IMG/VR virus record: IMGVR_UViG_3300042305_001773
Coordinates: 1-64,000 of that record
Direction: 5' to 3' (one strand)
DNA: 64,000 nucleotides
In this document: positions 8,021 through 57,393 of the stretch, one piece after another
Layout: every line of letters begins with the position of its first letter
Numbering within the stretch: position 1 is the stretch's first letter
Position numbers and translations under genes: made by a program
Notes under the pieces: model-generated
Told to the model about the DNA's origin: nothing
Seen by the model: the letters and a program-made list of their open reading frames with translations, nothing else
The model's database searches: none

Positions 8021-10402
8021 TTACGCGTTAGCGATAGCGCCAAGATCAATATCCTGCGCGGCTTCTTCGGGATACGGCTCGATGGTCTTCTGCTTCAGGA
8101 AGAGGATAACGTCGCCAAGCATTTCAAACGCGTTGCGCAGCGAGTCTTCCAGTTCCGGCATGTCGGCTTTGCCGTAACGTTCGGCAAACCGGTCACCGTG
8201 CCAGTAGAACATAAACAAAATGCGGCCTAACTTATCGAGGCCCTTGGTGAGTTCGCCCATGTAACGATCGACAAGCGAGTCGTCACGTACAGCGCGCAAC
8301 ATAGCTCCTACCATCGCCGTGTCGAACACCTCGCGCTGGCCGCTCTGGGCGGCGTCGATTACGGAGCGCACGTCCTTTTGATCGAGCAGCGTGTTCGGGT
8401 TGTAAACGCTGCGGTCGGTCTGGCTAGCGCTCATACCCGGCACCTGCATCGCGGTATCAATACCGAGTTGCGTGGGGACGTTGGTGCCCATAATGCTTTC
8501 GCCGCCCATCACCGGGCCCGGATCTGTCGGCGCAGATGGCGCGCCGTTGATCATCATCGGGCCGCCGTACGGGTCGGCGTACTTAACTCGGCACTCAAAC
8601 TTGCGCTTGGCGGCCGCCTGTTTCAGGATCTCGCGCGCAGCATCTTCGCGCAACCCGTGGTGTTCCACTAGCGTAACGAGCGCTTTGATCGGGCTCAGGT
8701 TGGCTTCTTTGTTAATCGTTACCGACGAGCCGTTGTGATAAACCGTCAGCGCGGCGGTCTTCTGCATAAGAGCCAGCTGCGCGTCAACGAGGTTACCGGG
8801 CATCAGGGCCGGCGGATCGCTCTCGCCACAGCCGCAGGCGCCTTGATCTTCGGCGTTTTCGGCGTCGTCCTCACCTTTGGTGACCTTGAGCAGCTTGAAA
8901 CCCTCTGGTACATAGATGTCGCCCATGCTCGCGCGGAGGCTGGCACCCTTTTTGCCGTTGAGGTGAATCCGCACGCCGTCACGCCACTTGTCGTAGTTCA
9001 GCGGATCGGTGTAGCAGCAGGCGCCGATAGAGCCCTTCGGCGGATACTTTGAGTGATCTTCGAGATGCGCTTCGTAAACAGTGCTGCCGTTGCTGTCGCC
9101 GTACTCTTTGATCACGCGGAACGGCGCAGTAGTATCGCCGCGCTTGCTGAGCGCAATGTAACGAGCATCCTTGCTGGGGACGCTGTTGGCTTCCGGCAGG
9201 CTGTCAAACCACTTGTCGAACTCTTCGCCTTCGATACGGGCGAGAGCAAAAACTTGGTCAGCACGAGTGTTTAACCAGTTACGCGCGCCATCAACACGCA
9301 CAACAGTGATGAAGTTTTCACGCTTAGCGGCGCCTTGCGGATGCACGGCAACGTAACAACGCTCGATGTTGCCCGGTTTGACCAGAATCTCGTACAGGCC
9401 GCTTTCGGTGGGGTTAAACAGCTTCTTCTCGACCTGAATGTGATACGGAACGGATACGTTGTCGCGGTCACGCTGGTCTTGGATGAGCACACCGTCGCGC
9501 AGCAGCTTTTCCTGATCTTCTTCGCTGTGGCCGACCGGAGCTTTGGTCTGAATCGTGACGTCGTACGTGATAACCGTTAGGCCCTTAACAGACGCCGGCT
9601 CCTTGGGCGCTTCGGACAGCACGCTGGCAATCTTGGTGCTGGCGGCAACTTCGCGGGCGGCGGCGTCAGCAATAGCTTGCTTCACGATATCTAAACCGTG
9701 AAATTCTTCGATTGCGGCGGCCATCTGCGGCGCGTGCTTGCAGGAGTTAATAAGCGCGCCGATCATTTCTCGCCCGGCCTGCTTCAGAAACGTCTTCAGG
9801 TTTAGCGCGTCGCCCATTTCTTTGAATGCCTGCGCTGTGTTTAACGTGGCACTCTTGGCGAGAGCAGGCATCGCAGCCGTCATCATCTCTTTGAGCGTTG
9901 GCTGGGCAGAGCCGAACTTAGCCGGGCTGCGCGAAAGCTGCGTGAAATCCGGCTGGCGCTGGCCGAGACCCGCTAGATTGCGTTGTACGCCGCTACCCAG
10001 AATGTTGGGTTTGCGGTTGATCAGATAGTTAATCCAGTTTTCCTTGAGCGGCACGAACATGTCCTGATTTTTGATATACAGGAGTTCGTGACCCTTGAGG
10101 TCGCCGTTCAGGAAGAATACCGGCGCATACAGCCAGTTCGAGCCCACCTTGAACGCAAACACGCCGACCGCCTTGGTGTTTTCTCGGTTGCGGTCGAGGA
10201 GCTGAAAGCCAATTTCGTGGTCAAGCAGCTTAGGCGCCGAATCGCGCAGATAGGCGTGCGCCAGATTGCTAAACGACTGCTCGAAAGAGGTGTCGTCGCC
10301 TTTGCCGCCTAAATCGGCGTATTTGGTCTGGGTGCGGTCATACGACTGCATCACCTTCAGCCAATGCTTAACAGACGACTCTTTCGCTTTTTTGTTATAC
10401 AC
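8021..10402 (-). CDS. Large putative virion protein
   Basis: GTG start at 10402 after GGAGG; KYA, KSA, KQA, KIA and KTA motifs. Confidence 0.55.
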   Translation of the reverse strand: MYNKKAKESSVKHWLKVMQSYDRTQTKYADLGGKGDDTSFEQSFSNLAHAYLRDSAPKLLDHEIGFQLLDRNRENTKAVGVFAFKVGSNWLYAPVFFLNGDLKGHELLYIKNQDMFVPLKENWINYLINRKPNILGSGVQRNLAGLGQRQPDFTQLSRSPAKFGSAQPTLKEMMTAAMPALAKSATLNTAQAFKEMGDALNLKTFLKQAGREMIGALINSCKHAPQMAAAIEEFHGLDIVKQAIADAAAREVAASTKIASVLSEAPKEPASVKGLTVITYDVTIQTKAPVGHSEEDQEKLLRDGVLIQDQRDRDNVSVPYHIQVEKKLFNPTESGLYEILVKPGNIERCYVAVHPQGAAKRENFITVVRVDGARNWLNTRADQVFALARIEGEEFDKWFDSLPEANSVPSKDARYIALSKRGDTTAPFRVIKEYGDSNGSTVYEAHLEDHSKYPPKGSIGACCYTDPLNYDKWRDGVRIHLNGKKGASLRASMGDIYVPEGFKLLKVTKGEDDAENAEDQGACGCGESDPPALMPGNLVDAQLALMQKTAALTVYHNGSSVTINKEANLSPIKALVTLVEHHGLREDAAREILKQAAAKRKFECRVKYADPYGGPMMINGAPSAPTDPGPVMGGESIMGTNVPTQLGIDTAMQVPGMSASQTDRSVYNPNTLLDQKDVRSVIDAAQSGQREVFDTAMVGAMLRAVRDDSLVDRYMGELTKGLDKLGRILFMFYWHGDRFAERYGKADMPELEDSLRNAFEMLGDVILFLKQKTIEPYPEEAAQDIDLGAIANA

Positions 10403-10483
10403 GGCCAGCCTCCATGCTGCGCTCAAAATTAGACACAGCATTAATTTACTGCGTCGAAGTCCCTATATCCTACAAAAACAGGC

Positions 10484-12364
10484 TCACGGCTTCCACCCGC
10501 TTGTTGCGCCTGTTACACCGAATTGCTCGCCTTGGGCTAAAGCAGGCACATAACTGCTGCCCGCGGTATCGCTGCTTAAACCGCGCTGTACGCTGTTCAT
10601 AAGCCCCTTTTCTTGATACGAACCCAGCATGCGGGTCATCCAATCCGGGTCGTTTGAGATGTTTGCCATGCCGCGCACCATTTCGGGCTGGAACGGCGGC
10701 GGTTCTTTGTGGGCCTGAATTGTTTTTACGCCGTATTTGTTTAAGTTTGTCAGCACGTTTTTACCGATCTTTGTGCCAATTGAATAGTGCAGTACCGGCT
10801 TTTCGAGGTAATGCCCTGTTAAAGTGCTGGGCGCGGCCGATACACTTCCTTCGCGCGGCGTCCAATTACGCTCAATAGTCGAATACGGCACCACGTCATC
10901 TGGTACGTAATCACCGTACTCGTCGGTAAGGCGTACGTGATTTACAAGACCGCGCGCTAACAGCTCGATGTTGCGGCGATGGGCCGTAATACCGCTGTTA
11001 CCCATGACTTGCCGCATGGCCTGCACGAAGTAACGACGGCCTTCGCCTACGCCCTTGTGCCTGACAATTTCTGCCGGATTTGGCATACCCTCTGATATAA
11101 CGTCACCAGCTTCAAGCTCATCGCCCTTTTTGACCGAAAGATTTCTCTCTGTCGGAACATAGTGGTCCTGACCGTTAATCTGCACATAGTGGCCGCCCTG
11201 CGGAGCCGGACGAACTTCCTGTACCCGGCCGTCGAGCTGCGCGTGCACGGCGCCGTCTGGATATTTTTTCGGGACCTGTACAAGCGCGTTGAGCGCTTTA
11301 AAACCAGAAATCGCTCCTGCGCCGCCGACACCGCCAGAATGCTTCGAGCTGATCTGGCTTTGCGTGACTGGTTCCGACAGCGCTTGTGCTGCCGCGATAC
11401 CCACATAATCTCCAATAGGCGGTAAACGCCCTTTTTCCCTGTAACCGACGTCTTTCGCATAAACTCCACCGTCTCCCGGACCGCCGACAATCGGGCTGCG
11501 GACTAAGATATCTTTGGCGCCGCTTTCTTTCAGATCCCGCAGAATCTTTGGCGTCAGCATCGTATTGCGCTTGTACGGCCCGACGGCTCGCGCAAGAAAC
11601 GCGCCTTCGTTATCGGGATCGTCTACGTCGGTCGGGTAGCCGCGCTCTTCTGCCGCCATACGCCGTTCTTCGTCCGTGTCGTCATCATCGTCAGCTGTCA
11701 CAAGCAGGCGGTGCGTCATCTGCGCCAGTTGTTTACCGTAGAAACCGGCGTCAGCTGTAGCCGTCTTGAGGTCGATAACGCCTTTGCGTGTACCGAACGC
11801 GCCGGCGAAATACTCCACCGGGCGCAAACCTTGACTGTAGCCGCGCAGCACCGGAATTGGAATCGGGTCGCCGCGGTGGTCGAGATACTGCATGTCGGCG
11901 CCGAGGATTGAATTCAGCTGAAACTTATTACCGACACCCGACCCGGCAATCTGATGCGCTAAAGGGTTATCTTGGCCCTCAGCTTCCTTGTATACCTTGT
12001 CGAGCAGTTCTTGTTGCGCCGTCTGCGCCAATTCAAGCAGTTTGATATTGCGCTGTTTTTCGTCAAGCCGTTTGTCAGCAAAGATGTCGCGCATCTGACT
12101 CTGTACGCGCAGCTGAACATGCCGCGCGGCCAAAGTCGGCCGAATATCTTTTAACCCAAAAGACAGGCCGTTCGTTGTATATCCGGCGTCACGACCGATA
12201 TCGTGAAGTCGTTTCATAACTTCGCGATATTTTTCTGGGTGATTCTTCGCCAGATCGGTGGCGACGTTTGACATAGTTTTTTTGGTCAATACGCGATCGT
12301 AATCGCGCATCTCTGGCGGCAACGCTTCGTTAATCAGAAGTTGTCCGAGCGTTGTCTTCAGCAT
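10484..12364 (-). CDS. rpoC: RNA polymerase beta' C-terminal subunit
   Basis: Bridge helix (GTRKGVIDLKTATADAGFYGKQL), trigger loop (GIAAAQALSEPVTQSQISSKHSGG), HRRNIELL. Confidence 0.92.
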   Translation of the reverse strand: MLKTTLGQLLINEALPPEMRDYDRVLTKKTMSNVATDLAKNHPEKYREVMKRLHDIGRDAGYTTNGLSFGLKDIRPTLAARHVQLRVQSQMRDIFADKRLDEKQRNIKLLELAQTAQQELLDKVYKEAEGQDNPLAHQIAGSGVGNKFQLNSILGADMQYLDHRGDPIPIPVLRGYSQGLRPVEYFAGAFGTRKGVIDLKTATADAGFYGKQLAQMTHRLLVTADDDDDTDEERRMAAEERGYPTDVDDPDNEGAFLARAVGPYKRNTMLTPKILRDLKESGAKDILVRSPIVGGPGDGGVYAKDVGYREKGRLPPIGDYVGIAAAQALSEPVTQSQISSKHSGGVGGAGAISGFKALNALVQVPKKYPDGAVHAQLDGRVQEVRPAPQGGHYVQINGQDHYVPTERNLSVKKGDELEAGDVISEGMPNPAEIVRHKGVGEGRRYFVQAMRQVMGNSGITAHRRNIELLARGLVNHVRLTDEYGDYVPDDVVPYSTIERNWTPREGSVSAAPSTLTGHYLEKPVLHYSIGTKIGKNVLTNLNKYGVKTIQAHKEPPPFQPEMVRGMANISNDPDWMTRMLGSYQEKGLMNSVQRGLSSDTAGSSYVPALAQGEQFGVTGATSGWKP

Positions 12365-12365
12365 G

Positions 12366-12605
12366 TCACGGCGTCCACATTATTTTTTGCATCGACTTCG
12401 GTTGAAACTCTGACACAACAACCGTTTTGTCGACACCCAGTGCGCGCAGCAGCGAGTGAAATTCTTTTTCGCCGACTGTTGAATAAACAATGGCTTCGTC
12501 AACCTGAATAGCGACAAACAGCGGATTGCCGAGATCGTCTTCGACAATCACGCTGTGTGCTTTTTTTTCAGTCGGCTGCAGACTGTGTTGCGTTTTAACC
12601 AGCAT
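12366..12605 (-). CDS. Hypothetical protein
   Basis: 79 aa, tightly packed. Confidence 0.55.
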   Translation of the reverse strand: MLVKTQHSLQPTEKKAHSVIVEDDLGNPLFVAIQVDEAIVYSTVGEKEFHSLLRALGVDKTVVVSEFQPKSMQKIMWTP

Positions 12606-13323
12606 TGTCCGCTATGCTCCGAATCATGGCGGCGATAGCGTTTGCTTTGATCTGCATTTGCGTCGGCGCATTCGGATTGGAGTAGCCGGGGCCAAAGGGG
12701 CGCCCTATCGAAGAAGCCGACTTTTCGGGGCGGTCCCACCACGCGGCTTTCGACGGGTCGCCTTCCGGCGGCGCGGCATTCGGCGGCATCGGTCCGCCCG
12801 GAGGCATCGGGCCGCCGGGTGGTTGCATGCCACCTTGCGCGTTCGGGTCCTGCGGCGGCGGGGCCATCGGGCCGCCCGGAAGAGCTGTTTCGGCCGGTGG
12901 GGCGCCCGTCGTACCCGGCGGTAGCACCAACGACTCTGGCGGTACCTGAACGCCCATCGCGTTCATGATGGCCGTAAGCTGCTGCTGCATGTTGTACAGC
13001 CGATAATCGAGCATTTGCATCATCTGCTCCGGCTTGAGCTTTTGCTGCGCGCCGGCAGGAGCTGCGCCCGGAGCGGCGGGTGCGGCGGGCGCTGCGGGAG
13101 GTGCAGCGGGAGGCGCCATTCCCATAGCCGCAGGATCCGCTGGCGGTGCGGCTGCTGCAGCAACAGCAGACGGATCGGCCGGCGGCACAGCCCCCATGGC
13201 GGCTGGGTCAACCGGCGGAGCACCACCAGCAGCAGCGGGATCCACCGCCGCTCCGGGCACTAATGCGGATTTCTCAAAACGCGCCTTCGCCAGCGCAATA
13301 AGCTCGGGGTTTACCGTAAACAT
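12595..13323 (-). CDS. Pro/Ala-rich putative virion protein
   Basis: PADPAAMG-like repeats; EKSA twice; GGAGG RBS. Confidence 0.55.
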   Translation of the reverse strand: MFTVNPELIALAKARFEKSALVPGAAVDPAAAGGAPPVDPAAMGAVPPADPSAVAAAAAPPADPAAMGMAPPAAPPAAPAAPAAPGAAPAGAQQKLKPEQMMQMLDYRLYNMQQQLTAIMNAMGVQVPPESLVLPPGTTGAPPAETALPGGPMAPPPQDPNAQGGMQPPGGPMPPGGPMPPNAAPPEGDPSKAAWWDRPEKSASSIGRPFGPGYSNPNAPTQMQIKANAIAAMIRSIADNAG

Positions 13324-13343
13324 ACAACCTCCATGTTTAACAC

Positions 13344-16300
13344 TTACGTATTATCTTCCACAATATGCACCGGGGTGTCCACCTCTATTTCGCCGCGTCG
13401 GTATGCCTGTACGGCATCCTGCTTGCTACGAAACACGCGGGGTTTGGCTTTTTTACTGATCCGACTGGACGCCAAGTATAACCCAGTCTGGTAGTCTTTG
13501 TTCGGAACGTAGTGCGCGCGAAAGGTAGACGCAGCAAACAAATTTTTGCTCGGCAGCATCTTTTCAACGGCTTCTTTCGCGGCGTCTTCTGTACTTGGGA
13601 CGTGATACTGCATCGCGTCTCCGTCGAAGTCGGCGCCAAACCCCTTGGTGATCACGGGGTTTACTTCCATAACTTTGTTCTTCGTCAGCTTAGGGTAAAA
13701 CGCCATCATGCCGTAACGGTGTAAAACAGGCGCGCGATTAATAACAATCGGTCGCGACGACATCTGACGGTCAAGCTCGGCGAACGCTTCTTTATTCTTA
13801 TCTTCAACCGCCTGCATCGCCTGCATGCGCGGGAGGCCCCGACGGACGAGGCCGCGGACGACAAACGGTTTGTAAATGTCCCACGCTTTCTCTTCCGGTA
13901 GCGCAACCTCGTCCATATCCAGATCGGGGTTTGGTGTGATGACAGCGCGGCCGACGAGATCTACCGTCGAGCTAAGCAGTTTGCGCTGAACGGTGCCGTA
14001 CTTTGGCGAGTTACCGAACACGTGCCGCAGGAAACCTTTGACATTACGCTCGACGTTCTTGGGCTGCTGCGGCTCGCCTAACCCGGTAACAGCCTTCATT
14101 GAGTCGTACACACTTAGCCGCTCGTCGCCGTAATCAGTTAGCGCGCCAGATGCTTCTTTCAGCGTGTCGTTGGCGTCGAGCAGTTCTTTGTACAAATAGT
14201 TAGCATCAGCTACGAGCGGGAGCTTTTTACTTCCCATTGTGCTCACGGGACGGAAGAGCGGCGGCAAGACTGGTACTTTACTGATCATCCAGTCTTTAGG
14301 GTGCACGCCGGTTGTTTCAGCACTCTTCAAAAAACCCAGCCGGCGCACGGCAGCGTCGCGTAGCGTCTTGCGCCCGGACTTGATATCTAAACGAGCCTGC
14401 TCAATTGCCTTCGGTAAGTTAATTCTTTCGAGCGCGGCTTTGATCGCTGTCGGGCCGGTTTTATCGCCCAGCTGCTCTCGGCCGGCCAGCACACCGCGGA
14501 ACTGCTTCTCGGTCAGGCCAAGCACACGGCGAATCGGGTCTTCCATGACGGGGTTAGGCAGCGGCTCGTGCAACGTGATCTTGCTCCACCGATTACCGCC
14601 GTGACCGCCTGTTAATGTCTCGTCAAACAGCCCGCCTGCAATAGGCTTGAGCCGCCCTTTCCAGTCCACGGTCTCGGAACTCTTTAGCTCGCGCGCGCCT
14701 GCCAGCTCGTCGACGTCTTTGTCGGTCATCGCCATCAAGTTTGAGCGCGTACCCTTGCGCACAACGTTGATACCCGACGCCTTGAGTTGGGTGACAAACT
14801 TCTCGTAAACGTGCGGTACTTTAGGCAGCGGCGGCGTATATCCGGCCATGAACTGCGACCAGTATTCGGGGTTAGCTTGGCCGCGCACCATCTTGGCATC
14901 GCGAATAACCTTGCCGGCACCGTGTGACAGTAACGCGCCCAGATCCAACATGCCGATGCGCTTGGCGCCTTCGCTGCCACCTTTTGCTGGTGTACCTTCG
15001 GCGGTATACGCGCCCATCGACCGGCCTTGCGCCTTTGACTCGCTGGTGTGGTGCAACTTCATGAAGAACCGGTTGCCAGTGAGGACGCCGCCGATTTTAC
15101 GTCCAGTTTCTGGATCGATAACGTCTTCGGTATCTGACAGGCCGTGCGCTGCTAATTCTTTCTGCGCAAACTCAATCAGGTCGCGTTTGTTATCAAAGTC
15201 CTTGAGCTTGTACGGTTTGCCAGTCTTTGCCGCAACTTTACCCAGCGCAGCCTCGATAACTTGCGTCGGGTTAATGCGGCTGATCAGACCCAGCGGCGAG
15301 ACAAGAACTTCAAACGGGTTACCATCGCGATCCTTGGGCATCTGGTCGTCAGGTACGATCTCGGCAACGACGCCCTTATCACCGAAGCGCCCCGTGAGCT
15401 TATCGCCGACGTCCATGGGTGCTTGGTTCTTCACTACAACGCTCACACCCTTCTTGGTGTGCATAACGTCGGTCACGATACCGGGGGCATGATGCTCCCA
15501 CGTGATTGTCTCGTTGGTGAAGTTACCGGCACGCCCACGATGCACTTTGCCGTACACCGTGTCTTTCTTCTTTGCCACAAGCACAAGTGGATCACCAAAC
15601 TTAACCTCAGTGCCCTTTTTGATGGCGCCGTCGTCGTCAAAGTTGTCGAGATACTTTTTGTCGTACTCAGTCGGGAACAAACTCACGAACGCCTTCTTGC
15701 CAACGTGAGTGTTGTCGTCCCACTCGGCTTCGTGCTGATACATGTGCTCAGACGTCAGCCGCTTGGATGCAGATTCAGAAATAACTACCGCGTCTTCGTA
15801 GTTCTTGCCGCGAAACGGCAGATACGCCGTACGTAGATTAAGCCCTAGCGCGGCGCTGCCGTTTTGGTCAGTAAAGTTTGACCGCGCCAGCAGCTGTCCG
15901 GGTTCGACTGTGTCACCCGGTTTCACAAGCGGCGTCTGGTGTAAAAACGTTTTACGGTTGTACGGCATTTCGTTGTACAGATCGATCGTCTTCTTGTTAC
16001 CATCTTTGTCGCGCAGCACGATACCGTCAGGTGTCACGTCCACTACTTGTGCCCGCTCAGTAGCCCGTGTGGCGCCCAGCTTCTCGCCCATCTCGTCTTC
16101 GTGCGACACGCTTTCGTCGTCAGCCTTGGCAGACTGCAACAGCGGCGCCTCGGCGTTTACGAGCGGAAGCGCCTGCGTAAACATTCGGCTACCCATGATC
16201 ACGCGATGACCTTTGATCATGGATTTAATCGGCACCATGTTTGTGAGCGCCGAAAACGTCGTGTCCATGTTGGGCAGACTGAACTGCGCTTCTTTTTTCG

Positions 16301-17747
16301 GCACGTATTTCAGCTTGCCGTTTACGAGCGCGGCTACAACAGGCAGGTTGTTATCTTCTTCGCCCGGAAATACTAGCGGTGTGTCGGCCAGCTCTTGTGG
16401 TGTCTTGTACACCTTCTCGCCGGTTTTCATATCTATAACCGGCGTATACACCTTGCCGTCGGAGCCCTTCATGGCGCCGCGAGCAAACCGCATGTCGACA
16501 CCCACTTTTCCAGACTCGGGCGTGCGAAGGTAGTCGATAAACCCAAGGTGGCTGGGCTGCACAGAACGCGACTCAGCGGGCACGGCGTCGAGCGAACCGA
16601 TGCCGCCCTCACCCATGCGCGTTACACGGGTCTGGTGGTCAAAGATCTCAGCCGGGTTGATTTCTTCAAGACTCGACCCCAAACCGCTGCCAATAAGCGC
16701 AGCTGAGATTGCCTTGTCGAATACACCCGACGGAATGTGATCAATTGACTTCTTCGCCGTGGCTTTCCAGAGTAGCTTGTTAAGAGACTGCCGGTCTTTG
16801 GTAAACCGCTCGGCAATGAGGTCTTCCGGGCCGACGACGGACTGATACACCATGTTGTCTCGGTCGTCGCTCTCGGCCTCGCGGCGATTCACTGCGATTA
16901 ATTTCTTAGTGATCGCCAGAATCGTCTCCGGCGTCATGTTCTTGTATTCAGAACCCAGTGTGCGCCGGGTGACTTCCGGGTCGAGTTCGGTCTTGGCAAA
17001 CTCGGCCGCGATCGCCTGCGCTTTGGCAATGGCGTCTGCGCCCGCGACTGGTTTATTTACAAGCCGGGCGTAAATTTTATCCAGCGTACCCGCATCGCCC
17101 TTCTCCATGTTGACCGCGGTGATCTCGTTGCCCCATGCTTTGCGAATGTCCTGATCCGACACGCCCATAGATTTGAGCAGCGGCATGAGCGGGATCTGCG
17201 CCTGCCCGATGCTGATCTTAAACACGCCAGTCTTGGGGTCGAGGAAGTACCGGTGCGAGCGACCCTTACCCGGAAGCGTGTTTACATGCGCCTCGATTTC
17301 GCCGTTGTCTTTTTCGCGGGTAAACACGCCGGGACGCAACCGCATTTGGTGCGCAAGGGTGTACTCCACACCGCCGTTCACAAACGTGCCAGAGTCGGTG
17401 AGGTACGGCACGTGAGCGATCGTGGCGCGGCGCTGGCCTACAGGCTGGCCGGTTTTGTTATCTGTAAGCGTCCACGTACCTTGCAATCGCCGGGCGAGTG
17501 TCCCTCTAGAAAGGACAGCTTTCTTTTGATCTGCCCTCGTGAAACGTTCAGGTCCTGTGTACCCGACGTCTTGAAGCTGCAGCGTATACAGGTCGTTCTG
17601 CAGCGGCTTGAGACTCTGCGCGCTGTTCAGCGCCTGATTGAAAATGTTATCGCGCATCATGCCAACATCGCCGAATGTGCGCATTGTGGGCGCAACGGGC
17701 GCGGGCATCATCGACGACTTTAGCTCGGGCAGCTCGGGGGCTGGCAT
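13344..17747 (-). CDS. rpoB: RNA polymerase beta fused to beta' N-terminal half
   Basis: beta motifs RTPESGKVG, NYEDAVVIS, GDKLTGRFGDKGVV, MKLHH; beta' motifs VPVLPPLFRP, NRAPVLHR and catalytic GADFDGDAM. Confidence 0.95.
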   Translation of the reverse strand: MPAPELPELKSSMMPAPVAPTMRTFGDVGMMRDNIFNQALNSAQSLKPLQNDLYTLQLQDVGYTGPERFTRADQKKAVLSRGTLARRLQGTWTLTDNKTGQPVGQRRATIAHVPYLTDSGTFVNGGVEYTLAHQMRLRPGVFTREKDNGEIEAHVNTLPGKGRSHRYFLDPKTGVFKISIGQAQIPLMPLLKSMGVSDQDIRKAWGNEITAVNMEKGDAGTLDKIYARLVNKPVAGADAIAKAQAIAAEFAKTELDPEVTRRTLGSEYKNMTPETILAITKKLIAVNRREAESDDRDNMVYQSVVGPEDLIAERFTKDRQSLNKLLWKATAKKSIDHIPSGVFDKAISAALIGSGLGSSLEEINPAEIFDHQTRVTRMGEGGIGSLDAVPAESRSVQPSHLGFIDYLRTPESGKVGVDMRFARGAMKGSDGKVYTPVIDMKTGEKVYKTPQELADTPLVFPGEEDNNLPVVAALVNGKLKYVPKKEAQFSLPNMDTTFSALTNMVPIKSMIKGHRVIMGSRMFTQALPLVNAEAPLLQSAKADDESVSHEDEMGEKLGATRATERAQVVDVTPDGIVLRDKDGNKKTIDLYNEMPYNRKTFLHQTPLVKPGDTVEPGQLLARSNFTDQNGSAALGLNLRTAYLPFRGKNYEDAVVISESASKRLTSEHMYQHEAEWDDNTHVGKKAFVSLFPTEYDKKYLDNFDDDGAIKKGTEVKFGDPLVLVAKKKDTVYGKVHRGRAGNFTNETITWEHHAPGIVTDVMHTKKGVSVVVKNQAPMDVGDKLTGRFGDKGVVAEIVPDDQMPKDRDGNPFEVLVSPLGLISRINPTQVIEAALGKVAAKTGKPYKLKDFDNKRDLIEFAQKELAAHGLSDTEDVIDPETGRKIGGVLTGNRFFMKLHHTSESKAQGRSMGAYTAEGTPAKGGSEGAKRIGMLDLGALLSHGAGKVIRDAKMVRGQANPEYWSQFMAGYTPPLPKVPHVYEKFVTQLKASGINVVRKGTRSNLMAMTDKDVDELAGARELKSSETVDWKGRLKPIAGGLFDETLTGGHGGNRWSKITLHEPLPNPVMEDPIRRVLGLTEKQFRGVLAGREQLGDKTGPTAIKAALERINLPKAIEQARLDIKSGRKTLRDAAVRRLGFLKSAETTGVHPKDWMISKVPVLPPLFRPVSTMGSKKLPLVADANYLYKELLDANDTLKEASGALTDYGDERLSVYDSMKAVTGLGEPQQPKNVERNVKGFLRHVFGNSPKYGTVQRKLLSSTVDLVGRAVITPNPDLDMDEVALPEEKAWDIYKPFVVRGLVRRGLPRMQAMQAVEDKNKEAFAELDRQMSSRPIVINRAPVLHRYGMMAFYPKLTKNKVMEVNPVITKGFGADFDGDAMQYHVPSTEDAAKEAVEKMLPSKNLFAASTFRAHYVPNKDYQTGLYLASSRISKKAKPRVFRSKQDAVQAYRRGEIEVDTPVHIVEDNT

Positions 17748-41321: not shown

Positions 41322-43511
41322 TTACTTACTGGAATCGGCGGCATCGTCGTCGTCCAGAATGCTTTTGCTGGCTTGGGGTTTGGCGTCTGGATATTTTAAC
41401 AGCCGCCGCTTCTTCTTTGAAAGCGGGCGTTTGGGCGGCGTTAATTTGAGCGTTTGAAACACAGCGCTCGCCTTTTCTTGCACTTCTTTGTCTTCTGTTA
41501 ACTCTCCTCGCCGCCGCTTGAGATACTTCTTTAATTCCTGCTCCTGATAGGCTTGGAGCATAGTTTTTACTTTGTCAGACCGGGTGCGCGCAACTAACTT
41601 CGCGGGGTCAATCGCCCAGTGCTGCAGCGCCCAGCCTCGTCTTGGCGTAGGATTAGTCATAAACGGCCCGCCATGACGCGCTTTGAAGCTCGCCCAGCGC
41701 TTGATCTGGCGCGCATCTTCGTCGGGAAGCCTGCGGCCCGAATTGTAGTTCTGGTACCACTCCAGCCAGCCCTTCGGGTCATGTTCTGTCACCCATTCCG
41801 GCTTCCATTCGCCTAAACTCGCGAGCCGTGGGCCCTCTTTTTCGTATAACGACTTGTACACACCCATGCGATGCAGCTGGCCGGGCGTGAAGTCAGGCTG
41901 AAACTCAGGAAGATCCGCGCTCTGCTTCTCCTGCTCTCTTTGCTTGCGGTATTTATCGCCCTCGTCTTGCAGGATCTTGCGGAAGATCTCGTTGAGCTGT
42001 TCTTTCTCGGCGGTAAGGTGTTCAAGTACTTCGTCACCTGTGCGCTCGCGCTTGTACCCCATGAGCTTGCCGATGAAGCTCGGGTCTTGGCTGGCACTTA
42101 GATATCTTTGCACTTGGACGTTCTTGAGTTCTTCAGGGAGATCTCGATGCGAGTCAAAGCGCAGACCACGACCACGAGCTTGCTGGCTGCGCGACTCATG
42201 CCAGTGCGGATCTAAAAGCTGAATGAGACTGGTGCCCTTGGTAGACAAACCCTCGGCGCCAGCAGGGCCAATTAAGAGCGCCCGGAGCTTGCCTTGGTTG
42301 TATGCGTCCACAGCGGCTTGGCGCGCCTTTGAGCTAACGCCGCCATGGAAAAACGCATGCGGGATCTTGGCTTTCTCTAGACCAGCTGCGTAGGGCGCCA
42401 AGCCAGAGTCAATGAAGTTGGAATAGATAATCGCCTTCTTGCGCTTGTCTTCACCCAGTGTCTTCTGCAGGTTCTGAAACGCGGCTTGTAATTTGGCGCT
42501 CTGCTGAAACGCCTTGGCCGGATCTTTGTCGGCGCGGAACGGCTGCGTGGATAAGCTCACTTGGCGCAGGCCCGTGAGAAAGCTATTTAACTTGGCCAGC
42601 TCGTCGCGGGACAACGGAAACTCTTGATCCAGCTTCCACAAAAACCCCGGCGGAATCTTCGTGCGAATAGCTTTTTGAATCTTGTCCTGCGCGTTGGACA
42701 ACGGTACGCGCACGACCTCTTCTTTAACATTTACACCTTCGGGCGTTTTGCTGGGCTGGTAATCTACTTTGCCTGCAAGCAACTGCCGCAGTTCTTTTTC
42801 GTTCTTGACGACTGGCTTGACGCCGGGCTTCACGCCACGCAGCCAACCAAACAAACCCGGCCGCACGGTTTTGTAGTCGATATACCGCTTCTCGAATTCT
42901 TCCGGCGTAATCTCTTTGTTATGGAGCATCGAGAGCAGATTGGCGAGATCCGTAGGCGAATTCGTGATCGGCGAACCAGTAAGTAACATTAAACGCTTCG
43001 CCTGCGCGGCGGCTTCAGCAGCTCCGGCCGAACTCGCGCTCCCCGGATTACGGAGCCTGTGCGCCTCGTCCATGATCAGCGTGCTGGGCGGCTTTTGAAA
43101 CTTCTTGCCCAGCGCCAGCCCCGTGTAGCTCATGATCTCGGGGTTAGAGTTCTGCGTGAACTTCTTGATTTCTTTGTCGAAATTACCCCTGAGACTAGCC
43201 GGGACTACCACGCCATACTCTTCGCCGTCTTGCTTCTTCGCTTCTTCAGCGGCGGCCAGTGAAGACAGCGATTTACCAGAACCTAAGCCGTGATAGACCA
43301 GTAAGCGCGGATCAGTGGTAGAAATACGGTCGGCGATTCTCTGCTGATGTTCCTGCAGCTGGATCTCGGGAAGAAGTTCAGCTTGTTTTTCGCTGCCGTT
43401 TTGGCGCTCGGAATTCCCGGCTGCCAAATTGGCCACTTTGTGCCATACGCTATCGGGCAGTGCGGATGGCTTGGGAGTGCTGCCGAGAATGCTATTTATT
43501 TCTGCGCTCAT
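41322..43511 (-). CDS. SF2/SNF2-like helicase of D6/D11 type with C-terminal W-rich domain
   Basis: LLVYHGLGSGKS, DEAH, TGSP, GAEGLS, DPHW..SR..QARGRGLR.DSH..LP. Confidence 0.88.
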   Translation of the reverse strand: MSAEINSILGSTPKPSALPDSVWHKVANLAAGNSERQNGSEKQAELLPEIQLQEHQQRIADRISTTDPRLLVYHGLGSGKSLSSLAAAEEAKKQDGEEYGVVVPASLRGNFDKEIKKFTQNSNPEIMSYTGLALGKKFQKPPSTLIMDEAHRLRNPGSASSAGAAEAAAQAKRLMLLTGSPITNSPTDLANLLSMLHNKEITPEEFEKRYIDYKTVRPGLFGWLRGVKPGVKPVVKNEKELRQLLAGKVDYQPSKTPEGVNVKEEVVRVPLSNAQDKIQKAIRTKIPPGFLWKLDQEFPLSRDELAKLNSFLTGLRQVSLSTQPFRADKDPAKAFQQSAKLQAAFQNLQKTLGEDKRKKAIIYSNFIDSGLAPYAAGLEKAKIPHAFFHGGVSSKARQAAVDAYNQGKLRALLIGPAGAEGLSTKGTSLIQLLDPHWHESRSQQARGRGLRFDSHRDLPEELKNVQVQRYLSASQDPSFIGKLMGYKRERTGDEVLEHLTAEKEQLNEIFRKILQDEGDKYRKQREQEKQSADLPEFQPDFTPGQLHRMGVYKSLYEKEGPRLASLGEWKPEWVTEHDPKGWLEWYQNYNSGRRLPDEDARQIKRWASFKARHGGPFMTNPTPRRGWALQHWAIDPAKLVARTRSDKVKTMLQAYQEQELKKYLKRRRGELTEDKEVQEKASAVFQTLKLTPPKRPLSKKKRRLLKYPDAKPQASKSILDDDDAADSSK

Positions 43512-43513
43512 GC

Positions 43514-43759
43514 TCAGTTCACCATGAGATTGCGCGCAGTTTGATACATCGCCCACAGCCCCAAGCCGGCGGACACCAAGCCCAGATATTTAAACGACGT
43601 GTACACCGTGACAAAGAAGTAAATGCCGAGCCAACACGCCAACGCACCCGTCACAACTGCGGCGATTATCCATTTTTTCACCGCAAACAATGCGGCGATT
43701 GGCCCGCACAGCAGCACGGCGCACACGATGAAAAAGACCAGTAACGCCAGACTTTCCAT
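43514..43759 (-). CDS. Membrane protein
   Basis: Three TM segments. Confidence 0.6.
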   Translation of the reverse strand: MESLALLVFFIVCAVLLCGPIAALFAVKKWIIAAVVTGALACWLGIYFFVTVYTSFKYLGLVSAGLGLWAMYQTARNLMVN

Positions 43760-47565: not shown

Positions 47566-47598
47566 ACTAGATATACCCGGTTTTGGCCGTTTATTTAG
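47566..47598 (-). promoter_or_regulatory. Phage promoter P1
   Basis: CTAAATAAA-N14-TATATCTAGT. Confidence 0.75.
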
Positions 47599-47601
47599 AT
47601 A

Positions 47602-50199
47602 TCAGCGCCCGGGCTTGCCGGCCGGCTGTTGTCTGGCCGCGGCGTCAGCTTTAAAGCCGCCCAGTGTCTTCTTGCCATAGTGCGCGAGCAGAGGCGCAGA
47701 AGACGCCAGCATGTACGTGGGCAGGCCAATGAACGCCGACCGGCCGCCCTTGAGCTTCATCTGGCGCATGAGCTTGGCGCCCCGACGAGACGCATCAAAC
47801 TCAGACGCTAACATCGGCATAGAACCGACTGTGCCCGCAATCGCCGAGTTCCGAGAGTTGTCCTCGTTGTTTGAAAGCAGCGCGCCGGCCGTACCTAATC
47901 CAAGCGCGGGCCGGCCGATTTGATTACCGCGCATGAGCCACTTGCCGCCCATGTGGTGTCCCAGCTCGTGCGCCAAAACACCCGGATTTTTCATTCGCCA
48001 GATGTGCCCAATCGTGGGTTTTGATATCCCGATTCCCGGATTCGCTGGTGTATAAAACGCTGGAGAATTACGCACAATATCAGCAGCTGACCGGCGCATT
48101 CTGTACTTGATGTTATTCATGAGATCGCCAATCCAGTTGCCCGTTGTTTTAGGCGCTATTTTCGGGTCAATCTTGCTGGCGACGGTCAAATTATCTACGA
48201 CATCTACGCCCTGACTCTTCGCGTAGTCACTGATTTGCTGCCACGCTCTGTTCCTTTCCATCGTTACCGGGGTGTCAAACAATTCAGGGCGCGCCACACG
48301 GTTCATGTACGCAGTTAATGGCAAGCCAATCGCAGCATTTGTCGCGGGCATGCCACCGAGATACCAGCCCATCGAGTGCCCTAGACCGGGCTTAGCGGGT
48401 TCTTTTTTTTTAACTTCGGCTGCGCTTTTTTTACCAAAGCGCGCGGCAAAATCTGCGGGCGAGACCGGGCGCAATTGAAACGGCGCGGCGGGTGTAGCGG
48501 GTGCTGGGGTTGCTGCGGGCGGGGCTGGTGGTGCAGTAACCGGAGCTGCCGGGCGCTGAACAACCGGCGCAGGTTTAGCCTGCGGCGCAACAACCGGGGC
48601 CTGACGAACTGCTTGAACTGGCGCTGGTTTCGGCTGGGTTACGGCGGGGGCAGCAGGGCGTGGCGTCGGGGCTTGTGACGGCAAGCTCGTCGCGGCACCG
48701 CGTTGACTCATGTAAACGTCGCGCATTTTTTGATAAGTTTGCATTTTTTGCCATTCCGGCACGCCGTTGTTTACGTTTACCACATTCTTCATGTAGTTAG
48801 TGAGGTCTGCGGACGTGGGTCTGGCGGGCATCTTGAACGCTGTCTGCGCGGCGGCGGCCACCGGCTTTTTCGCAACCCCGCTGACCGCTTTACCGGCCAT
48901 GCGACCAATTGAGCCGAGTAAACCGGCCAGCTTCTCGCCGCCGACAGAATTAGCCGTCCCAAACGCTGCGTTACCTGTAATATCACCCGTCGAAGACAAC
49001 GCGCCGTATGAATTAATGGGATTGGCGTTGGGAGACGATCCGCCGCCAACAGGGGGTAGTTGGCCAGACGGGGCCGGGGAGCCCATGTTTGCTGGCTGGG
49101 CGGCGGGAGCCTGTGGTTGGGCCTGTGGCGCCTGTGCCTGCATGCCCATAGGCAGCGGCGTACCCATCGCAGGCATGGCGTAACGTTTAATTCCGGCGTT
49201 TGCAGGCATGCGGGCAGCCTCTCGGGCCTCAATTTCAGCCCTTTCATTCTCTATCGCCTGCATAATGGGCTGCGACAAAACCGCTGAGATCTTCGCTAAC
49301 AAGGGATTTATTACGTTATTTGGCTTTGTTTCCGAGTTACACCTTTCGCCCTTGGTTTTGACGACCTTGGGTGGATTTTCGCCTGCAACTGTTGGCTTAT
49401 CACTGGCCGGCTGCTCGATATAGACCTCTTTAGTATCCGCTTGCTTGGATAATTTCCTGTAAATATCGAGGGCTACAGAGTTTACAGCCGATTGTTTATA
49501 AGTTGTCATATTGGGTTTATTTGCAAAGGCTGCGTTAATGGGGGATTGGCTTGCGGTACCGGTGACATGGGGCAAAAACCCGACAACTCCACCAACACCA
49601 AGGTTCATGACACCGTTTGCGACCCCGATACCCTTCTCTAATGTCTCGGTGGGGAGTTCGCCGTACTGTGTGACATAGCGCTGGGTCTGATTCTGAAGCT
49701 GCTGGACGTCATTGAAGGCTTTAGTGGCCTTGTTGACGGTACTTTTATTAACGCCAGCGATTGTTTTAGGTAGTTTCGCGTTTACGAGCTTATCGGAGAG
49801 TTCTAATTGGCGCGCAGACAGAACAGCGGCGTTTGGGAGGCGCTTGAGTAGCCTGTACGAGCGCATGGGGTTAAAGAACAGCACGCTTTCCCTTGCCGCG
49901 TTGTTAAATAACTGCTGCAACATCGGCGAGCCAACCCGTTTTGATAGCATTCCGGCAGCTGCAAGGCCGGCGGTTGTGCCCAGAGTGCTTAATCCGGCGG
50001 CAGCGGCAGTGTCTCGGGCTGCGGCACCGGGAGAAAAGTCGGCTTTTTTGCTATCTGTATCTGACTCGGGCTCTTTTTTACTGTCAGACGCGTACATGGG
50101 GAGTTTCTTTTTGGTCGGATACTCATGCGCCCAGCGTTTAGCGATCTCTGGATGCTCGGCCCACAGAAACCTACGCTGTTTTTCAGACTTAAACGGCAT
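47602..50199 (-). CDS. Putative virion polyprotein with C-terminal Zn-metallopeptidase
   Basis: MPFKSEKQRRFLWA N-module; KKA, KQSA, KQA, KLA and KSA sites; LAHELGHH...EFDAS. Confidence 0.65.
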   Translation of the reverse strand: MPFKSEKQRRFLWAEHPEIAKRWAHEYPTKKKLPMYASDSKKEPESDTDSKKADFSPGAAARDTAAAAGLSTLGTTAGLAAAGMLSKRVGSPMLQQLFNNAARESVLFFNPMRSYRLLKRLPNAAVLSARQLELSDKLVNAKLPKTIAGVNKSTVNKATKAFNDVQQLQNQTQRYVTQYGELPTETLEKGIGVANGVMNLGVGGVVGFLPHVTGTASQSPINAAFANKPNMTTYKQSAVNSVALDIYRKLSKQADTKEVYIEQPASDKPTVAGENPPKVVKTKGERCNSETKPNNVINPLLAKISAVLSQPIMQAIENERAEIEAREAARMPANAGIKRYAMPAMGTPLPMGMQAQAPQAQPQAPAAQPANMGSPAPSGQLPPVGGGSSPNANPINSYGALSSTGDITGNAAFGTANSVGGEKLAGLLGSIGRMAGKAVSGVAKKPVAAAAQTAFKMPARPTSADLTNYMKNVVNVNNGVPEWQKMQTYQKMRDVYMSQRGAATSLPSQAPTPRPAAPAVTQPKPAPVQAVRQAPVVAPQAKPAPVVQRPAAPVTAPPAPPAATPAPATPAAPFQLRPVSPADFAARFGKKSAAEVKKKEPAKPGLGHSMGWYLGGMPATNAAIGLPLTAYMNRVARPELFDTPVTMERNRAWQQISDYAKSQGVDVVDNLTVASKIDPKIAPKTTGNWIGDLMNNIKYRMRRSAADIVRNSPAFYTPANPGIGISKPTIGHIWRMKNPGVLAHELGHHMGGKWLMRGNQIGRPALGLGTAGALLSNNEDNSRNSAIAGTVGSMPMLASEFDASRRGAKLMRQMKLKGGRSAFIGLPTYMLASSAPLLAHYGKKTLGGFKADAAARQQPAGKPGR

Positions 50200-50416
50200 G
50201 GCGTAGCTCAAACGATAGTGAACTCAGAGGAATTCCCGGATAGTTGGAGTTCGAACTAGTCGGAAAAACCTACGAGTTGGGCGGCGCGGCTGTTCCCAAG
50301 CTGAATACGCCCCATTTTGGCATACAAGGGCTGAGAAGAAAAGGGCGCTCGACGCGTCTGATACACTAGAGGGTGGCTTGGGGAATGCAATCAGGCGTTT
50401 CGACAAGGAGGTCGCC

Positions 50417-50746
50417 ATGAAAGTTCTAAGAATTATGTTATTTAGCCTGCTGTGCGTGCTGAATACGGGACTAGCCTGCGCCGATACCGTGTTAATGTTC
50501 TCCGCAGAATGGTGCAAATACTGCCAGATCGCCAAAAGGGATCTCTTGGAGAACAAAGACGAGGTGGCAGAGTGGAATGTTGAGGTGGTCGATGCTGATG
50601 CGAGCCGAGAAATGGTGCAGCAGTATGGCGTGAAAACGCTCCCGACGTTTATCTATCTAAATGACGCCGGGGAAGAAGTCGACCGGGTGGCTGGCTATAA
50701 GGGCTACAACCGGCTGAAGCGCTGGGTCGAGCGAAATAAGCGCTGA
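50417..50746 (+). CDS. Secreted thioredoxin-family protein
   Basis: Signal peptide, WCKYC, LPTF; AAGGAGG RBS; only convincing plus-strand gene. Confidence 0.9.
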   Translation: MKVLRIMLFSLLCVLNTGLACADTVLMFSAEWCKYCQIAKRDLLENKDEVAEWNVEVVDADASREMVQQYGVKTLPTFIYLNDAGEEVDRVAGYKGYNRLKRWVERNKR

Positions 50747-50844
50747 TATCTAAAGAAAGCGCTCGCAGCCCCGGGGCTTAGGCGGCACCCGGGGCTGCAA
50801 TACGCTTCCGCGCAGCAGTTAAGTTATTAACTACTGCGCACACA

Positions 50845-51501: not shown

Positions 51502-51594
51502 CGCAACCTCTTCTTTCTATGGAGAGGAGTAAAGCTACACCTTACCCGGGTAACATGCGGGAGTATCGACAACACGCCGATACCAGAGAGGGTC

Positions 51595-51627: not shown

Positions 51628-51630
51628 TTA

Positions 51631-57390: not shown

Positions 57391-57393
57391 TTT

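What the first reader, a model, noticed from the sequence alone, without database searches (positions are those of the whole stretch)
12364..14800. Re-partitioned RNAP: beta fused to the beta' N-half, split shortly after the catalytic loop
Seen: the beta C-terminus (QLKASGINV) runs straight into the beta' N-terminus (MAMTDKDVDEL..ELKSSETVDW) near 14750. Both double-psi barrels and the catalytic motif (GADFDGD, not NADFDGD, at 13617-13637) are therefore in one chain. The bridge helix and trigger loop are in a separate gene, two ORFs downstream. The split position resembles cyanobacterial rpoC1/rpoC2 and the fusion resembles Helicobacter rpoBC, but the combination is unusual. No alpha or sigma gene is recognisable in the window. 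The two intervening ORFs (79 and 242 aa) are candidate accessory subunits.
Basis: partly seen in the sequence, partly recalled or inferred. Interest (0 to 1): 0.7.

Follow-up and report, generated by a model that had tools for sequence, protein, structure and literature searches.

The report
Phage RNA polymerase with fused beta–beta' chain
A 205-kb lake-water phage builds a bacterial-type RNA polymerase from two unusually partitioned chains (whole beta fused to the first 40% of beta', and the rest of beta' separately); the layout is real and conserved across a large phage group that includes the cultured Salmonella phage Arash, but I found no paper that describes it.

Summary
One 1467-aa ORF (window 13344-17747, minus) holds a complete beta followed in frame by beta' up to about E. 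coli residue 568. A 626-aa ORF (10484-12364) holds the rest of beta', with the bridge helix and trigger loop. It is not an assembly artefact. 49 IMG/VR contigs, at least 150 protein clusters at 50% identity and an independent lake metagenome carry the same fusion. Salmonella phage Arash and Vibrio phages D69/D148/D181 share the fusion, the same split site and the same loss of the beta' zinc ribbon.

The split lies about 50-60 residues upstream of the cyanobacterial rpoC1/rpoC2 split, so it only resembles it. The genome has no alpha, omega or second RNAP. It does encode a sigma-70-family protein at 183.5 kb, outside the window; this protein is conserved with the enzyme and predicted to dock on its clamp helices.

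The two intervening ORFs are conserved only in the close clade and show no link to RNAP.

In Arash the homologues are abundant virion proteins. The best reading is therefore a capsid-packaged, sigma-dependent, two-chain RNAP for host-independent transcription. It is a new variant of a known kind and of moderate interest.

The parts
13344..17747 (-). Fused RNAP large subunit (1467 aa, P0001). It holds a complete beta homologue (aa 1 to about 996), a linker of about 8 aa, and then beta' from about E. coli residue 20 to about 568.
   Evidence: Pfam Rpb2_2/3/6, Rpb1_1/2. (best PDB matches are bacterial beta, 5e-68, and beta', 5e-48). (alignments).
14760..17747 (-). Beta portion. It includes the beta double-psi barrel with the Lys pair (GDKLTGRFGDKGV). 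The gammaproteobacterial insert at E. coli 938-1040 is absent. The beta portion aligns to the last residues of E. coli beta.
   Evidence: MAFFT against Salmonella beta; coordinates.
14736..14762 (-). Beta/beta' junction: a short linker (VRKGTRSN) between the beta C-terminus (..QLKASGINV) and the beta' N-terminus (..MTDKDVDEL). The Met residues here are not conserved in relatives, so a conserved internal start is unlikely.
   Evidence: an independent contig bridges the junction with 0 differences.
13347..14735 (-). Beta' N portion. The zinc ribbon (E. coli C70-C88) is deleted. The lid, clamp helices and rudder (aa 1166-1231) are present, as is the beta' double-psi barrel. The chain ends at about E. 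coli beta' 568.
14100..14219 (-). Clamp helices (aa 1177-1216), the predicted docking site of the phage sigma-like protein.
   Evidence: interface residues 1168-1231. (aligned to E. coli beta' about 260-310).
13617..13637 (-). Catalytic Mg loop GADFDGD (aa 1371-1377). All three Asp are kept. The first position varies across the family (G, N, A, T, S).
12595..13323 (-). 242-aa Pro/Ala-rich ORF (P0003). It has a conserved core (QKLKPEQMMQM.DYRLYNMQQQLTAIMNAMGVQ..). Its role is unknown and it is probably not an RNAP subunit.
12366..12605 (-). 79-aa ORF (P0004), a small beta-meander plus helix. Its stop lies 1 nt before the beta'C start. Its role is unknown.
   Evidence: pLDDT 87. (no fold match). 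(no similarity to the D69 ORF in the same place).
10484..12364 (-). Beta' C subunit (626 aa, P0002). It runs from about E. coli beta' 569 onward and carries the bridge helix (aa 178-223, window 11696-11833) and the trigger loop N-arm (aa 322-345, window 11330-11401). The four Cys of the second Zn site are lost.
8021..10441 (-). 806-aa protein (P0005), a weak homologue of Arash gp218, which is a virion protein. It places the RNAP genes inside the head and structural module.
41322..43556 (-). SNF2-family helicase (744 aa), homologue of Arash gp217. In Arash, gp217 is encoded next to beta'C and is found in virions. It is a candidate transcription partner.
   Evidence: 31% identity, 4.5e-54.
47570..62971 (-). 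Six copies of a promoter-like motif, CTAAATA-N16-YATATY, all on the coding strand, at 47570, 51599, 53831, 54213, 55166 and 62943. They are candidate phage promoters. Which polymerase reads them was not shown.

Best explanation
The window is the first 64 kb of a complete 205-kb genome of a tailed phage from lake water.

**What the enzyme is.** The phage encodes one bacterial-type multisubunit RNA polymerase whose catalytic core has two polypeptides.
- Chain 1 is a full beta joined by a linker of about 8 residues to beta' residues from about 20 to about 568 (E. coli numbering). It therefore holds both double-psi barrels, the Mg loop and the clamp helices.
- Chain 2 is the rest of beta', with the bridge helix, the trigger loop and the C-terminal modules.

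The beta' zinc ribbon has been deleted. There is no alpha, omega or second polymerase.

**Promoter specificity (inferred).** This most likely comes from a phage sigma-70-family protein with regions 2, 3 and 4. It is encoded 170 kb away and predicted to dock on the clamp helices of chain 1.

**Packaging (inferred from homology and gene context).** The enzyme is made late, packaged in the capsid together with the sigma and probably an SNF2 helicase, and ejected with the DNA. This would allow early phage genes to be transcribed without the host polymerase. New copies of the same enzyme would then serve later phases, because the genome has no other polymerase.

**Role of the fusion (inferred).** Tying beta to beta'N covalently may replace the alpha-dimer assembly platform.

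**Shown:** the architecture, its conservation, and the presence of the sigma. **Inferred:** packaging, sigma dependence, and the assembly role of the fusion.
For: **Architecture.**

**Not an artefact; wide conservation.**
- 49 IMG/VR loci at 71-97% identity all carry the fused gene and the same six-gene order.
- The best 150 representatives at 50% identity (E below 1e-253) join beta C and beta' N in one chain.
- 1461 clusters at 90% identity were found, mostly on contigs of about 200 kb.
- A contig from another lake sample bridges the junction with no difference.

**Single origin.** Arash, D69 and the window share the fusion, the split at E. coli beta' 564-569 and the zinc-ribbon deletion. Unfused phage beta' proteins (Rhizobium Y65, Va2, Carin-5) keep the ribbon and are unsplit.

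**Other subunits.**
- No alpha (PF01000, PF01193) and no omega (PF01192) in the 205-kb genome; the controls rang.
- Only one RNAP set.

**Sigma.**
- The 284-aa protein has Sigma70_r3 at 1.6e-9 and a weak r4 helix-turn-helix. A region-2-like FDPxKG..TH motif is visible in its alignment.
- It is homologous to Arash gp10.
- It is present in 4 of 4 complete relatives and in Vibrio phage D69.
- The complex prediction with P0001:1000-1467 scored 0.74 against a best control of 0.00. That mark was reached by 58 of 80 solved complexes and 2 of 110 mismatched pairs. The interface lies on the clamp helices and sigma region 2.

**Packaging.**
- In Arash virion mass spectrometry, gp206 (the fused chain) is the most detected protein (3516 spectra, 100% coverage). 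gp216 (beta'C), gp10 (sigma), gp217 (SNF2) and gp218 are also detected (PMC10585845).
- In the window the RNAP genes sit between homologues of Arash structural proteins and the major capsid gene.

**Phage-specific promoters.** A conserved promoter-like motif occurs on the coding strand only, in all five related genomes searched.
Against: - Packaging is inferred from one relative at 33% identity. The Arash authors themselves allow that abundant enzymes may co-purify with particles.
- The sigma complex prediction can score high from memory of solved sigma/beta' complexes. It shows likeness, not binding.
- The motif has sigma-70-like spacing and could be read by the host holoenzyme. Only 1-6 copies occur per genome.
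- No experiment shows that the 1467-aa chain stays uncleaved.
- The search for a T7-type RNAP was uninformative, because the control was silent.
- The window's enzyme has lost a second Zn site that Arash and D69 keep, so details may differ among members.
Confidence: 0.7

Rival explanations
1. The enzyme is a non-virion polymerase only. Host RNAP would read the early promoters, and the phage enzyme would take over middle or late genes inside the cell, without being packaged.
For: The CTAAATA-N16-YATATY motif has the 16-17 bp spacing of sigma-70 promoters. The Arash authors note that abundant enzymes might contaminate virion preparations.
Against: The RNAP genes lie inside the conserved head module, next to homologues of Arash virion proteins. 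In Arash the fused chain, beta'C, the sigma and the SNF2 helicase are all detected in particles, and the fused chain gives the most spectra.
Confidence: 0.15
2. The fused polypeptide is a precursor that is cut at or near the junction, for example by the prohead protease. The working enzyme would then have separate beta, beta'N and beta'C chains, as in phiKZ-type enzymes.
For: Head proteins of large phages are often processed (general knowledge). The linker region is the least conserved part of the junction.
Against: No cleavage motif was identified. The linker is short (about 8-10 aa). The fusion is conserved across more than 150 divergent clusters, which suggests selection for the covalent link. 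This was not tested directly.
Confidence: 0.1
3. The 79-aa and 242-aa ORFs between the two RNAP genes are accessory subunits, functional stand-ins for omega or alpha.
For: They are strictly syntenic in 43-44 related loci. The 79-aa ORF ends 1 nt before the beta'C start, which suggests co-translation.
Against: They have no counterpart in Arash, where nine unrelated genes fill the gap, some on the other strand. They have none in D69 either, where two unrelated small ORFs fill it. They evolve faster than the RNAP. They have no Pfam, PHROG or fold match. The 242-aa protein is largely Pro/Ala-rich low-complexity sequence.
Confidence: 0.12
4. The fusion or the split is an assembly or gene-calling artefact, or the gene is decaying.
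For: None was found.
Against: There is one open frame with all catalytic residues. The same architecture occurs in 49 independent contigs, in four cultured phages and in an independent lake assembly. The Arash product has 100% peptide coverage.
Confidence: 0.01

Closest known systems
Salmonella phage Arash gp206 + gp216 (with sigma gp10 and SNF2 helicase gp217); Vibrio phages D69, D148 and D181
   Same: They share the beta-beta'N fusion, the same beta' split site (E. coli about 564-569) and the same loss of the beta' zinc ribbon. They share a sigma homologue, an SNF2 helicase homologue, and the gene order beta'C ... gp218-like ... gp222-like ... capsid gene.
   Different: Identity is only 31-33%. 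Their Mg loop is AADYDGD. They keep the second Zn site that the window has lost. Different genes lie between the two RNAP genes. Arash has a second sigma (gp196) with no homologue found here. The Arash paper labels the proteins beta and beta' without noting the fusion.
Helicobacter/Wolbachia-type rpoBC fusion (own knowledge)
   Same: The beta C-terminus is joined in frame to the beta' N-terminus through a short linker.
   Different: In those bacteria the whole beta' follows in the same chain, and alpha and omega are present. Here beta' is cut at about residue 568, and alpha and omega are absent.
Cyanobacterial/plastid rpoC1-rpoC2 (gamma/beta') split
   Same: Beta' is divided after its double-psi barrel and before the bridge helix.
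   Different: The site differs. The phage chain ends at about gamma residue 563 of 625, which is 50-60 residues upstream. In cyanobacteria beta is a separate chain.
phiKZ/AR9-type jumbo-phage virion and non-virion RNAPs (PMC7598289, PMC7824862)
   Same: Both are phage-encoded multisubunit RNAPs without alpha or omega. Both have beta' split after the barrel. Both are linked to an SNF2-type helicase. Virion packaging is shown there and inferred here.
   Different: Those enzymes have 4-5 fragments, with beta also split, and come as two paralogous sets. They have no sigma-family protein and are far more diverged. Here beta is whole and fused, there is one set, a sigma-70-family protein is present, and similarity to bacterial beta and beta' is strong (5e-68 and 5e-48).
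mReC phages (Weinheimer and Aylward 2020, PMC7481178) and unfused phage RNAPs (Rhizobium phage RHph_Y65, Vibrio phage Va2, Cobetia phage Carin-5)
   Same: These are tailed phages with beta and beta' that standard models still recognise. Carin-5 has a sigma gene next to the RNAP genes.
   Different: Those have separate beta and unsplit beta' chains of 1083-1192 aa that keep the zinc ribbon. The mReC capsid and terminase families (PF07068, PF03237) were not found here; the terminase here is GpA-type, PF05876. That paper does not mention any fusion or split.
Single-chain two-barrel RNAPs (crAss-like phage RNAP, YonO, P23-45 tape-measure RNAP)
   Same: Both catalytic barrels are in one polypeptide. 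Some of these enzymes are virion-delivered.
   Different: Those are highly reduced and diverged and are not recognised by the beta and beta' models. Here both parts are full-length and bacterial-like, and the bridge helix and trigger loop are on a second chain.

Membership tests
Bacterial-type multisubunit RNAP (beta/beta') | Beta double-psi barrel with the conserved Lys pair; Pfam Rpb2_6 above its cut-off | tested here: met
   Rpb2_6 scored 172.5 bits against a cut-off of 23.4. GDKLTGRFGDKGV aligns to E. coli K1065/K1073.
Bacterial-type multisubunit RNAP (beta/beta') | Beta' double-psi barrel with the DxDGD Mg loop | tested here: met
   Rpb1_2 scored 87 bits against a cut-off of 25.3. GADFDGD is at aa 1371-1377.
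Bacterial-type multisubunit RNAP (beta/beta') | Bridge helix and trigger loop | tested here: met
   P0002 aa 178-223 and 322-345 align to E. coli beta' 765-810 and 905-935. Rpb1_5 scored 85.6 bits.
Bacterial-type multisubunit RNAP (beta/beta') | Alpha dimer and omega in the core | tested here: not met
   PF01000, PF01193 and PF01192 found nothing in the 205-kb genome, while the controls rang in 14 of 14.
Bacterial-type multisubunit RNAP (beta/beta') | Beta' N-terminal zinc ribbon (C70, C72, C85, C88) | tested here: not met
   It is deleted in the window, Arash and D69. None of the 150 representatives has a Cys cluster there.
Bacterial-type multisubunit RNAP (beta/beta') | Sigma-70-family initiation factor | tested here: inconclusive
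   A sigma-family protein is encoded (Sigma70_r3 at 38.2 bits against a cut-off of 25.3) and is predicted to bind the clamp helices (0.74 against a control of 0.00). Function was not tested.
rpoBC fusion (Helicobacter type) | Beta and beta' joined in one reading frame | tested here: met
rpoBC fusion (Helicobacter type) | The complete beta' lies in the fused chain | tested here: not met
   The fused chain ends at about E. coli beta' 568. The rest is P0002.
rpoC1/rpoC2 split (cyanobacteria, plastids) | Split at the gamma/beta' boundary (gamma of about 625 aa) | tested here: not met
   P0001 ends opposite gamma residue about 563 of 624-625 (8h3v_E, 8syi_D).
phiKZ/AR9-type phage RNAP | Beta split into two or more polypeptides; two paralogous sets; no sigma-family factor | tested here: not met
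   Beta is whole. There is one set. A sigma-family gene is present.
phiKZ/AR9-type phage RNAP | Enzyme packaged in the virion | not testable with these tools
   Only indirect evidence is available: the Arash virion proteome and the gene context.
Arash-type fused phage RNAP (unnamed family) | Beta-beta'N fusion, split at about beta' 565-569, no zinc ribbon, and co-occurring gp10-like sigma and gp217-like SNF2 helicase | tested here: met
mReC lineage (Weinheimer and Aylward 2020) | T4-type capsid (PF07068) and terminase PF03237/VOG01069 | tested here: not met
   The capsid halves give no PF07068 hit. The terminase is GpA_ATPase, PF05876. A search for six related metagenome ids (not the window's own record) in the paper's tables turned up other contigs with separate beta and beta' proteins, none clearly from this clade.

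The most novel reading that the evidence does not exclude
This family is a minimal, self-assembling bacterial-type holoenzyme made of two core chains and a sigma. In it, the covalent beta-beta'N link replaces the universal alpha-dimer and omega assembly platform. The whole holoenzyme, with an SNF2 helicase, travels in the capsid. It would be the first sigma-dependent virion RNAP and a natural experiment in how far the cellular RNAP core can be re-partitioned.
Probability: 0.35. Interest if true: 0.75.

Novelty: new variant of a known kind. Interest (0 to 1): 0.55.

Why it matters
Phage multisubunit RNAPs are used to ask what the minimal working form of the cellular enzyme is. The known phiKZ and AR9 enzymes are fragmented, lack sigma and are very diverged.

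This family goes the other way. It stays close enough to bacterial beta and beta' to align residue by residue. Even so, it has dropped alpha, omega and the zinc ribbon, fused the two largest subunits, cut beta' at a new place and kept a sigma-family factor.

The family is abundant in lakes and has a cultured member on Salmonella (Arash). Its biochemistry, its structure and the question of how a core assembles without alpha are therefore directly testable. Its many inteins and a gene cut by a homing endonuclease also show how such re-partitioning can arise.

Tried and rejected
**Function of the two small ORFs.**
- Pfam and PHROGs gave no hits for either.
- A confident model of the 79-aa protein (pLDDT 87) matched nothing in the PDB or BFVD (best E 0.83 and 0.12).
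- A profile comparison with the D69 ORF in the same position found nothing.

**Searches that did not help.**
- The T7-type RNAP search (PF00940) was uninformative because the control was silent.
- Sigma70_r2 (PF04542) was not found by the genome search. Region 2 is only visible in the alignment.
- Simple k-mer enrichment in intergenic DNA gave no genome-wide promoter, only the six-copy CTAAATA motif.
- The scan of bacterial genomes for host clues found only two short contigs in one unclassified MAG. The host remains unknown. One NCBI copy is binned with a betaproteobacterial MAG, which is weak evidence.

**Literature.**
- The 'moraphage' paper on large aquatic phages was checked. That lineage has no RNAP.
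- The mReC paper was checked for fusion or split and mentions neither.

**Not possible with these tools.**
- Folding the whole core (2093 aa), with or without the small ORFs, exceeds the size limits and was not attempted.
- No deep phylogeny was built, because only one bacterial beta' was at hand. Common origin of the fused forms rests on shared derived characters.

Full report
**1. What is in the sequence.**

All genes in this part of the window run on the minus strand.

- ORF 13344-17747 gives a 1467-aa protein, P0001, without stops.
- Pfam finds the beta domains Rpb2_2, Rpb2_3 and Rpb2_6 (1.9e-50) in residues 143-915. It finds the beta' domains Rpb1_1 and Rpb1_2 (2.2e-24) in residues 1127-1395 of the same chain.
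- The 626-aa ORF 10484-12364 (P0002) carries Rpb1_5.
QLKASGINV is at aa 987-995, MAMTDKD at 1005, and GADFDGD at aa 1371-1377, which is window 13617-13637.
- The best matches among solved structures are bacterial beta (5e-68) and beta' (5e-48 for P0001; 1.7e-36 for P0002). None is archaeal or eukaryotic.

**2. Exact anatomy.**

I aligned the proteins to Salmonella beta and beta', which share E. coli numbering.

- The beta part is complete to the last residues of beta. It lacks only the gammaproteobacterial insert at 938-1040.
- A linker of about 8 residues follows. Beta' then starts at about residue 20.
- The Met residues at the junction are not conserved among relatives, so a conserved internal start is unlikely.
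- The beta' zinc ribbon (C70-C88) is cleanly deleted.
- The lid, clamp helices, rudder and Mg loop are present.
- P0001 ends and P0002 begins at E. coli beta' 568/569.
- Against cyanobacterial gamma (624-625 aa), P0001 ends at about residue 563. The split is therefore 50-60 residues upstream of the rpoC1/rpoC2 site.
- P0002 has the bridge helix (aa 178-223) and the first arm of the trigger loop (aa 322-345). It has lost the four Cys of the second zinc site.

**3. It is not an artefact, and it is not rare.**

- The window is the first 64 kb of a 205,044-bp viral record rated complete. The capsid gene runs across the record's ends.
- 49 IMG/VR loci at 71-97% identity all hold the fused gene and the same order of six genes.
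- I searched 1.8 billion representatives with residues 560-1467. The best 150 (45-62% identity, E below 1e-253) almost all join the beta C part and the beta' N part in one chain.
- At 90% identity there are 1461 clusters, mostly on contigs of about 200 kb.
- The phage occurs in many lake-water metagenomes. A 3905-nt contig from another sample and study bridges the junction with no difference and no indel.

**4. Cultured relatives.**

- Salmonella phage Arash (gp206, 1525 aa; gp216, 606 aa) and Vibrio phages D69, D148 and D181 have the same layout at 31-33% identity.
- They share the split site (E. coli 564-568) and the zinc-ribbon deletion.
- Phage beta' proteins that are not fused (Rhizobium RHph_Y65, Vibrio Va2, Cobetia Carin-5) are unsplit and keep the ribbon.
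- Three shared derived characters point to one origin of the fused form.

**5. Other subunits.**

- The whole genome has no alpha, no omega and no second beta or beta' set.
- It does have a 284-aa sigma-70-family protein at 183566-184420.
  - It has Sigma70_r3 at 1.6e-9 and a weak region-4 helix-turn-helix.
  - A region-2-like motif is seen in its alignment.
  - It is the homologue of Arash gp10.
  - It is present in four of four complete relatives and in D69.
- A complex prediction with P0001:1000-1467 supports binding.
  - The score was 0.74 against a best control of 0.00. That mark was reached by 58 of 80 solved complexes and 2 of 110 mismatched pairs.
  - The interface lies on residues 1168-1231, the clamp helices, and on sigma residues 59-98 and 129-136.
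  - Sigma/beta' complexes are solved, so this shows likeness rather than proof.
- An SNF2 helicase in the window (41322-43556) is the homologue of Arash gp217, which is encoded next to beta'C in that phage.

**6. The two ORFs in between.**

- Both are kept in order in 43-44 related loci. They diverge faster than the RNAP: 42-65% identity against 72-80%.
- Arash has nine unrelated genes in that gap, some on the other strand. D69 has two unrelated small ORFs.
- Neither ORF has a family match.
- The 79-aa protein folds confidently (pLDDT 87) into a small beta-meander plus helix with no known counterpart.
- I do not regard either as a supported accessory subunit.

**7. Likely mode of action.**

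- In the Arash virion proteome the fused chain gives the most spectra (3516, with 100% coverage). Beta'C, the sigma gp10, the SNF2 helicase gp217 and gp218 are also found (PMC10585845).
- In the window the RNAP genes lie in the same head-module order as in Arash. That order is beta'C, then a gp218-like gene, then a gp222-like gene, then the capsid gene.
- I therefore infer a capsid-packaged enzyme that is ejected with the DNA and starts transcription with its own sigma.
- A motif, CTAAATA-N16-YATATY, occurs six times in the window (47570-62971). It is always on the coding strand, against 0.25 expected by chance.
- The motif recurs on the coding strand only in four related genomes, and the reversed-pattern control found none.
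- It may be a promoter class. Which polymerase reads it is open.

**8. Relation to the literature.**

- The reviews of jumbo-phage RNAPs describe only the phiKZ and AR9 kind: beta and beta' in 4-5 pieces, two sets, no sigma (PMC7598289, PMC7824862, PMC13282480).
- Weinheimer and Aylward described metagenomic phages with beta and beta' (mReC) but mention no fusion or split. Their capsid and terminase families differ from those here.
- The Arash paper calls the two proteins beta and beta'.
- In the library I could search, I found no description of this partition.

**9. Verdict.**

- It is a new variant of a known kind. It is widespread and has a cultured representative, which makes it experimentally tractable.

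Noticed in passing
window 47570-47598, 51599-51627, 53831-53859, 54213-54241, 55166-55194, 62943-62971 (minus strand): A promoter-like motif, CTAAATA-N16-YATATY, often with a small inverted repeat in the spacer. There are six copies against 0.25 expected. It is conserved on the coding strand only in four related genomes, and the reversed-pattern control found none.
   Followed up: partly
window 28782-29816 (-): A 344-aa actin-fold protein matches Pfam Volactin over its full length (8e-62). This family was named from an archaeal actin. A cytoskeletal protein in a phage of about 200 kb.
   Followed up: no
window 59467-59807 (-), plus tRNAs at 27339, 60031, 60110, 60921, 61405 and 62032: The phage carries a tmRNA gene (tag peptide GTFNSVPALAA) and six tRNA genes.
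   Followed up: no
L032:10001-15424; L034-L036; L050; L009:15300-18400; proteins P0008, P0052, P0036: Many homologues of the fused gene and of beta'C carry in-frame inteins with LAGLIDADG or other homing-endonuclease domains. Some have up to 4-5 insertions and reach 3350 aa. One intein sits right at the catalytic loop. The window's own genes have none.
   Followed up: partly
L072 (Vibrio phage D181) 2923-8437: In D181 and D148 the fused gene is annotated as two CDS (514 + 1006 aa). They are separated by about 950 bp holding a homing-endonuclease gene, whereas D69 has it intact. This may show how such genes get re-partitioned.
   Followed up: partly
window 10484-12364 (P0002 aa about 225-300): The four Cys of the second beta' zinc site (E. 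coli C814, C888, C895, C898) are replaced in the window's enzyme. An acidic insert (DDDDDTDEERR) sits there. Arash and D69 keep the Cys.
   Followed up: no
window 25487-27325 (-) and 52220-53455 (-): A 612-aa protein combines a 2H phosphoesterase, NUDIX and DUF5661. A 411-aa protein resembles Ntn-hydrolases of the AAT/NAAA type.
   Followed up: no
whole genome G000 (205,044 bp): By a simple ORF call, 199 of 236 called ORFs are on one strand. The capsid gene is split across the record's ends (window 3-386 and 204358-205041), so the record is a permuted complete genome.
   Followed up: partly
window 12887-13328: A freshwater metatranscriptome run holds a 447-nt contig of a close relative of the 242-aa ORF, with 11 differences. 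The tool warns that this does not show transcription.
   Followed up: no
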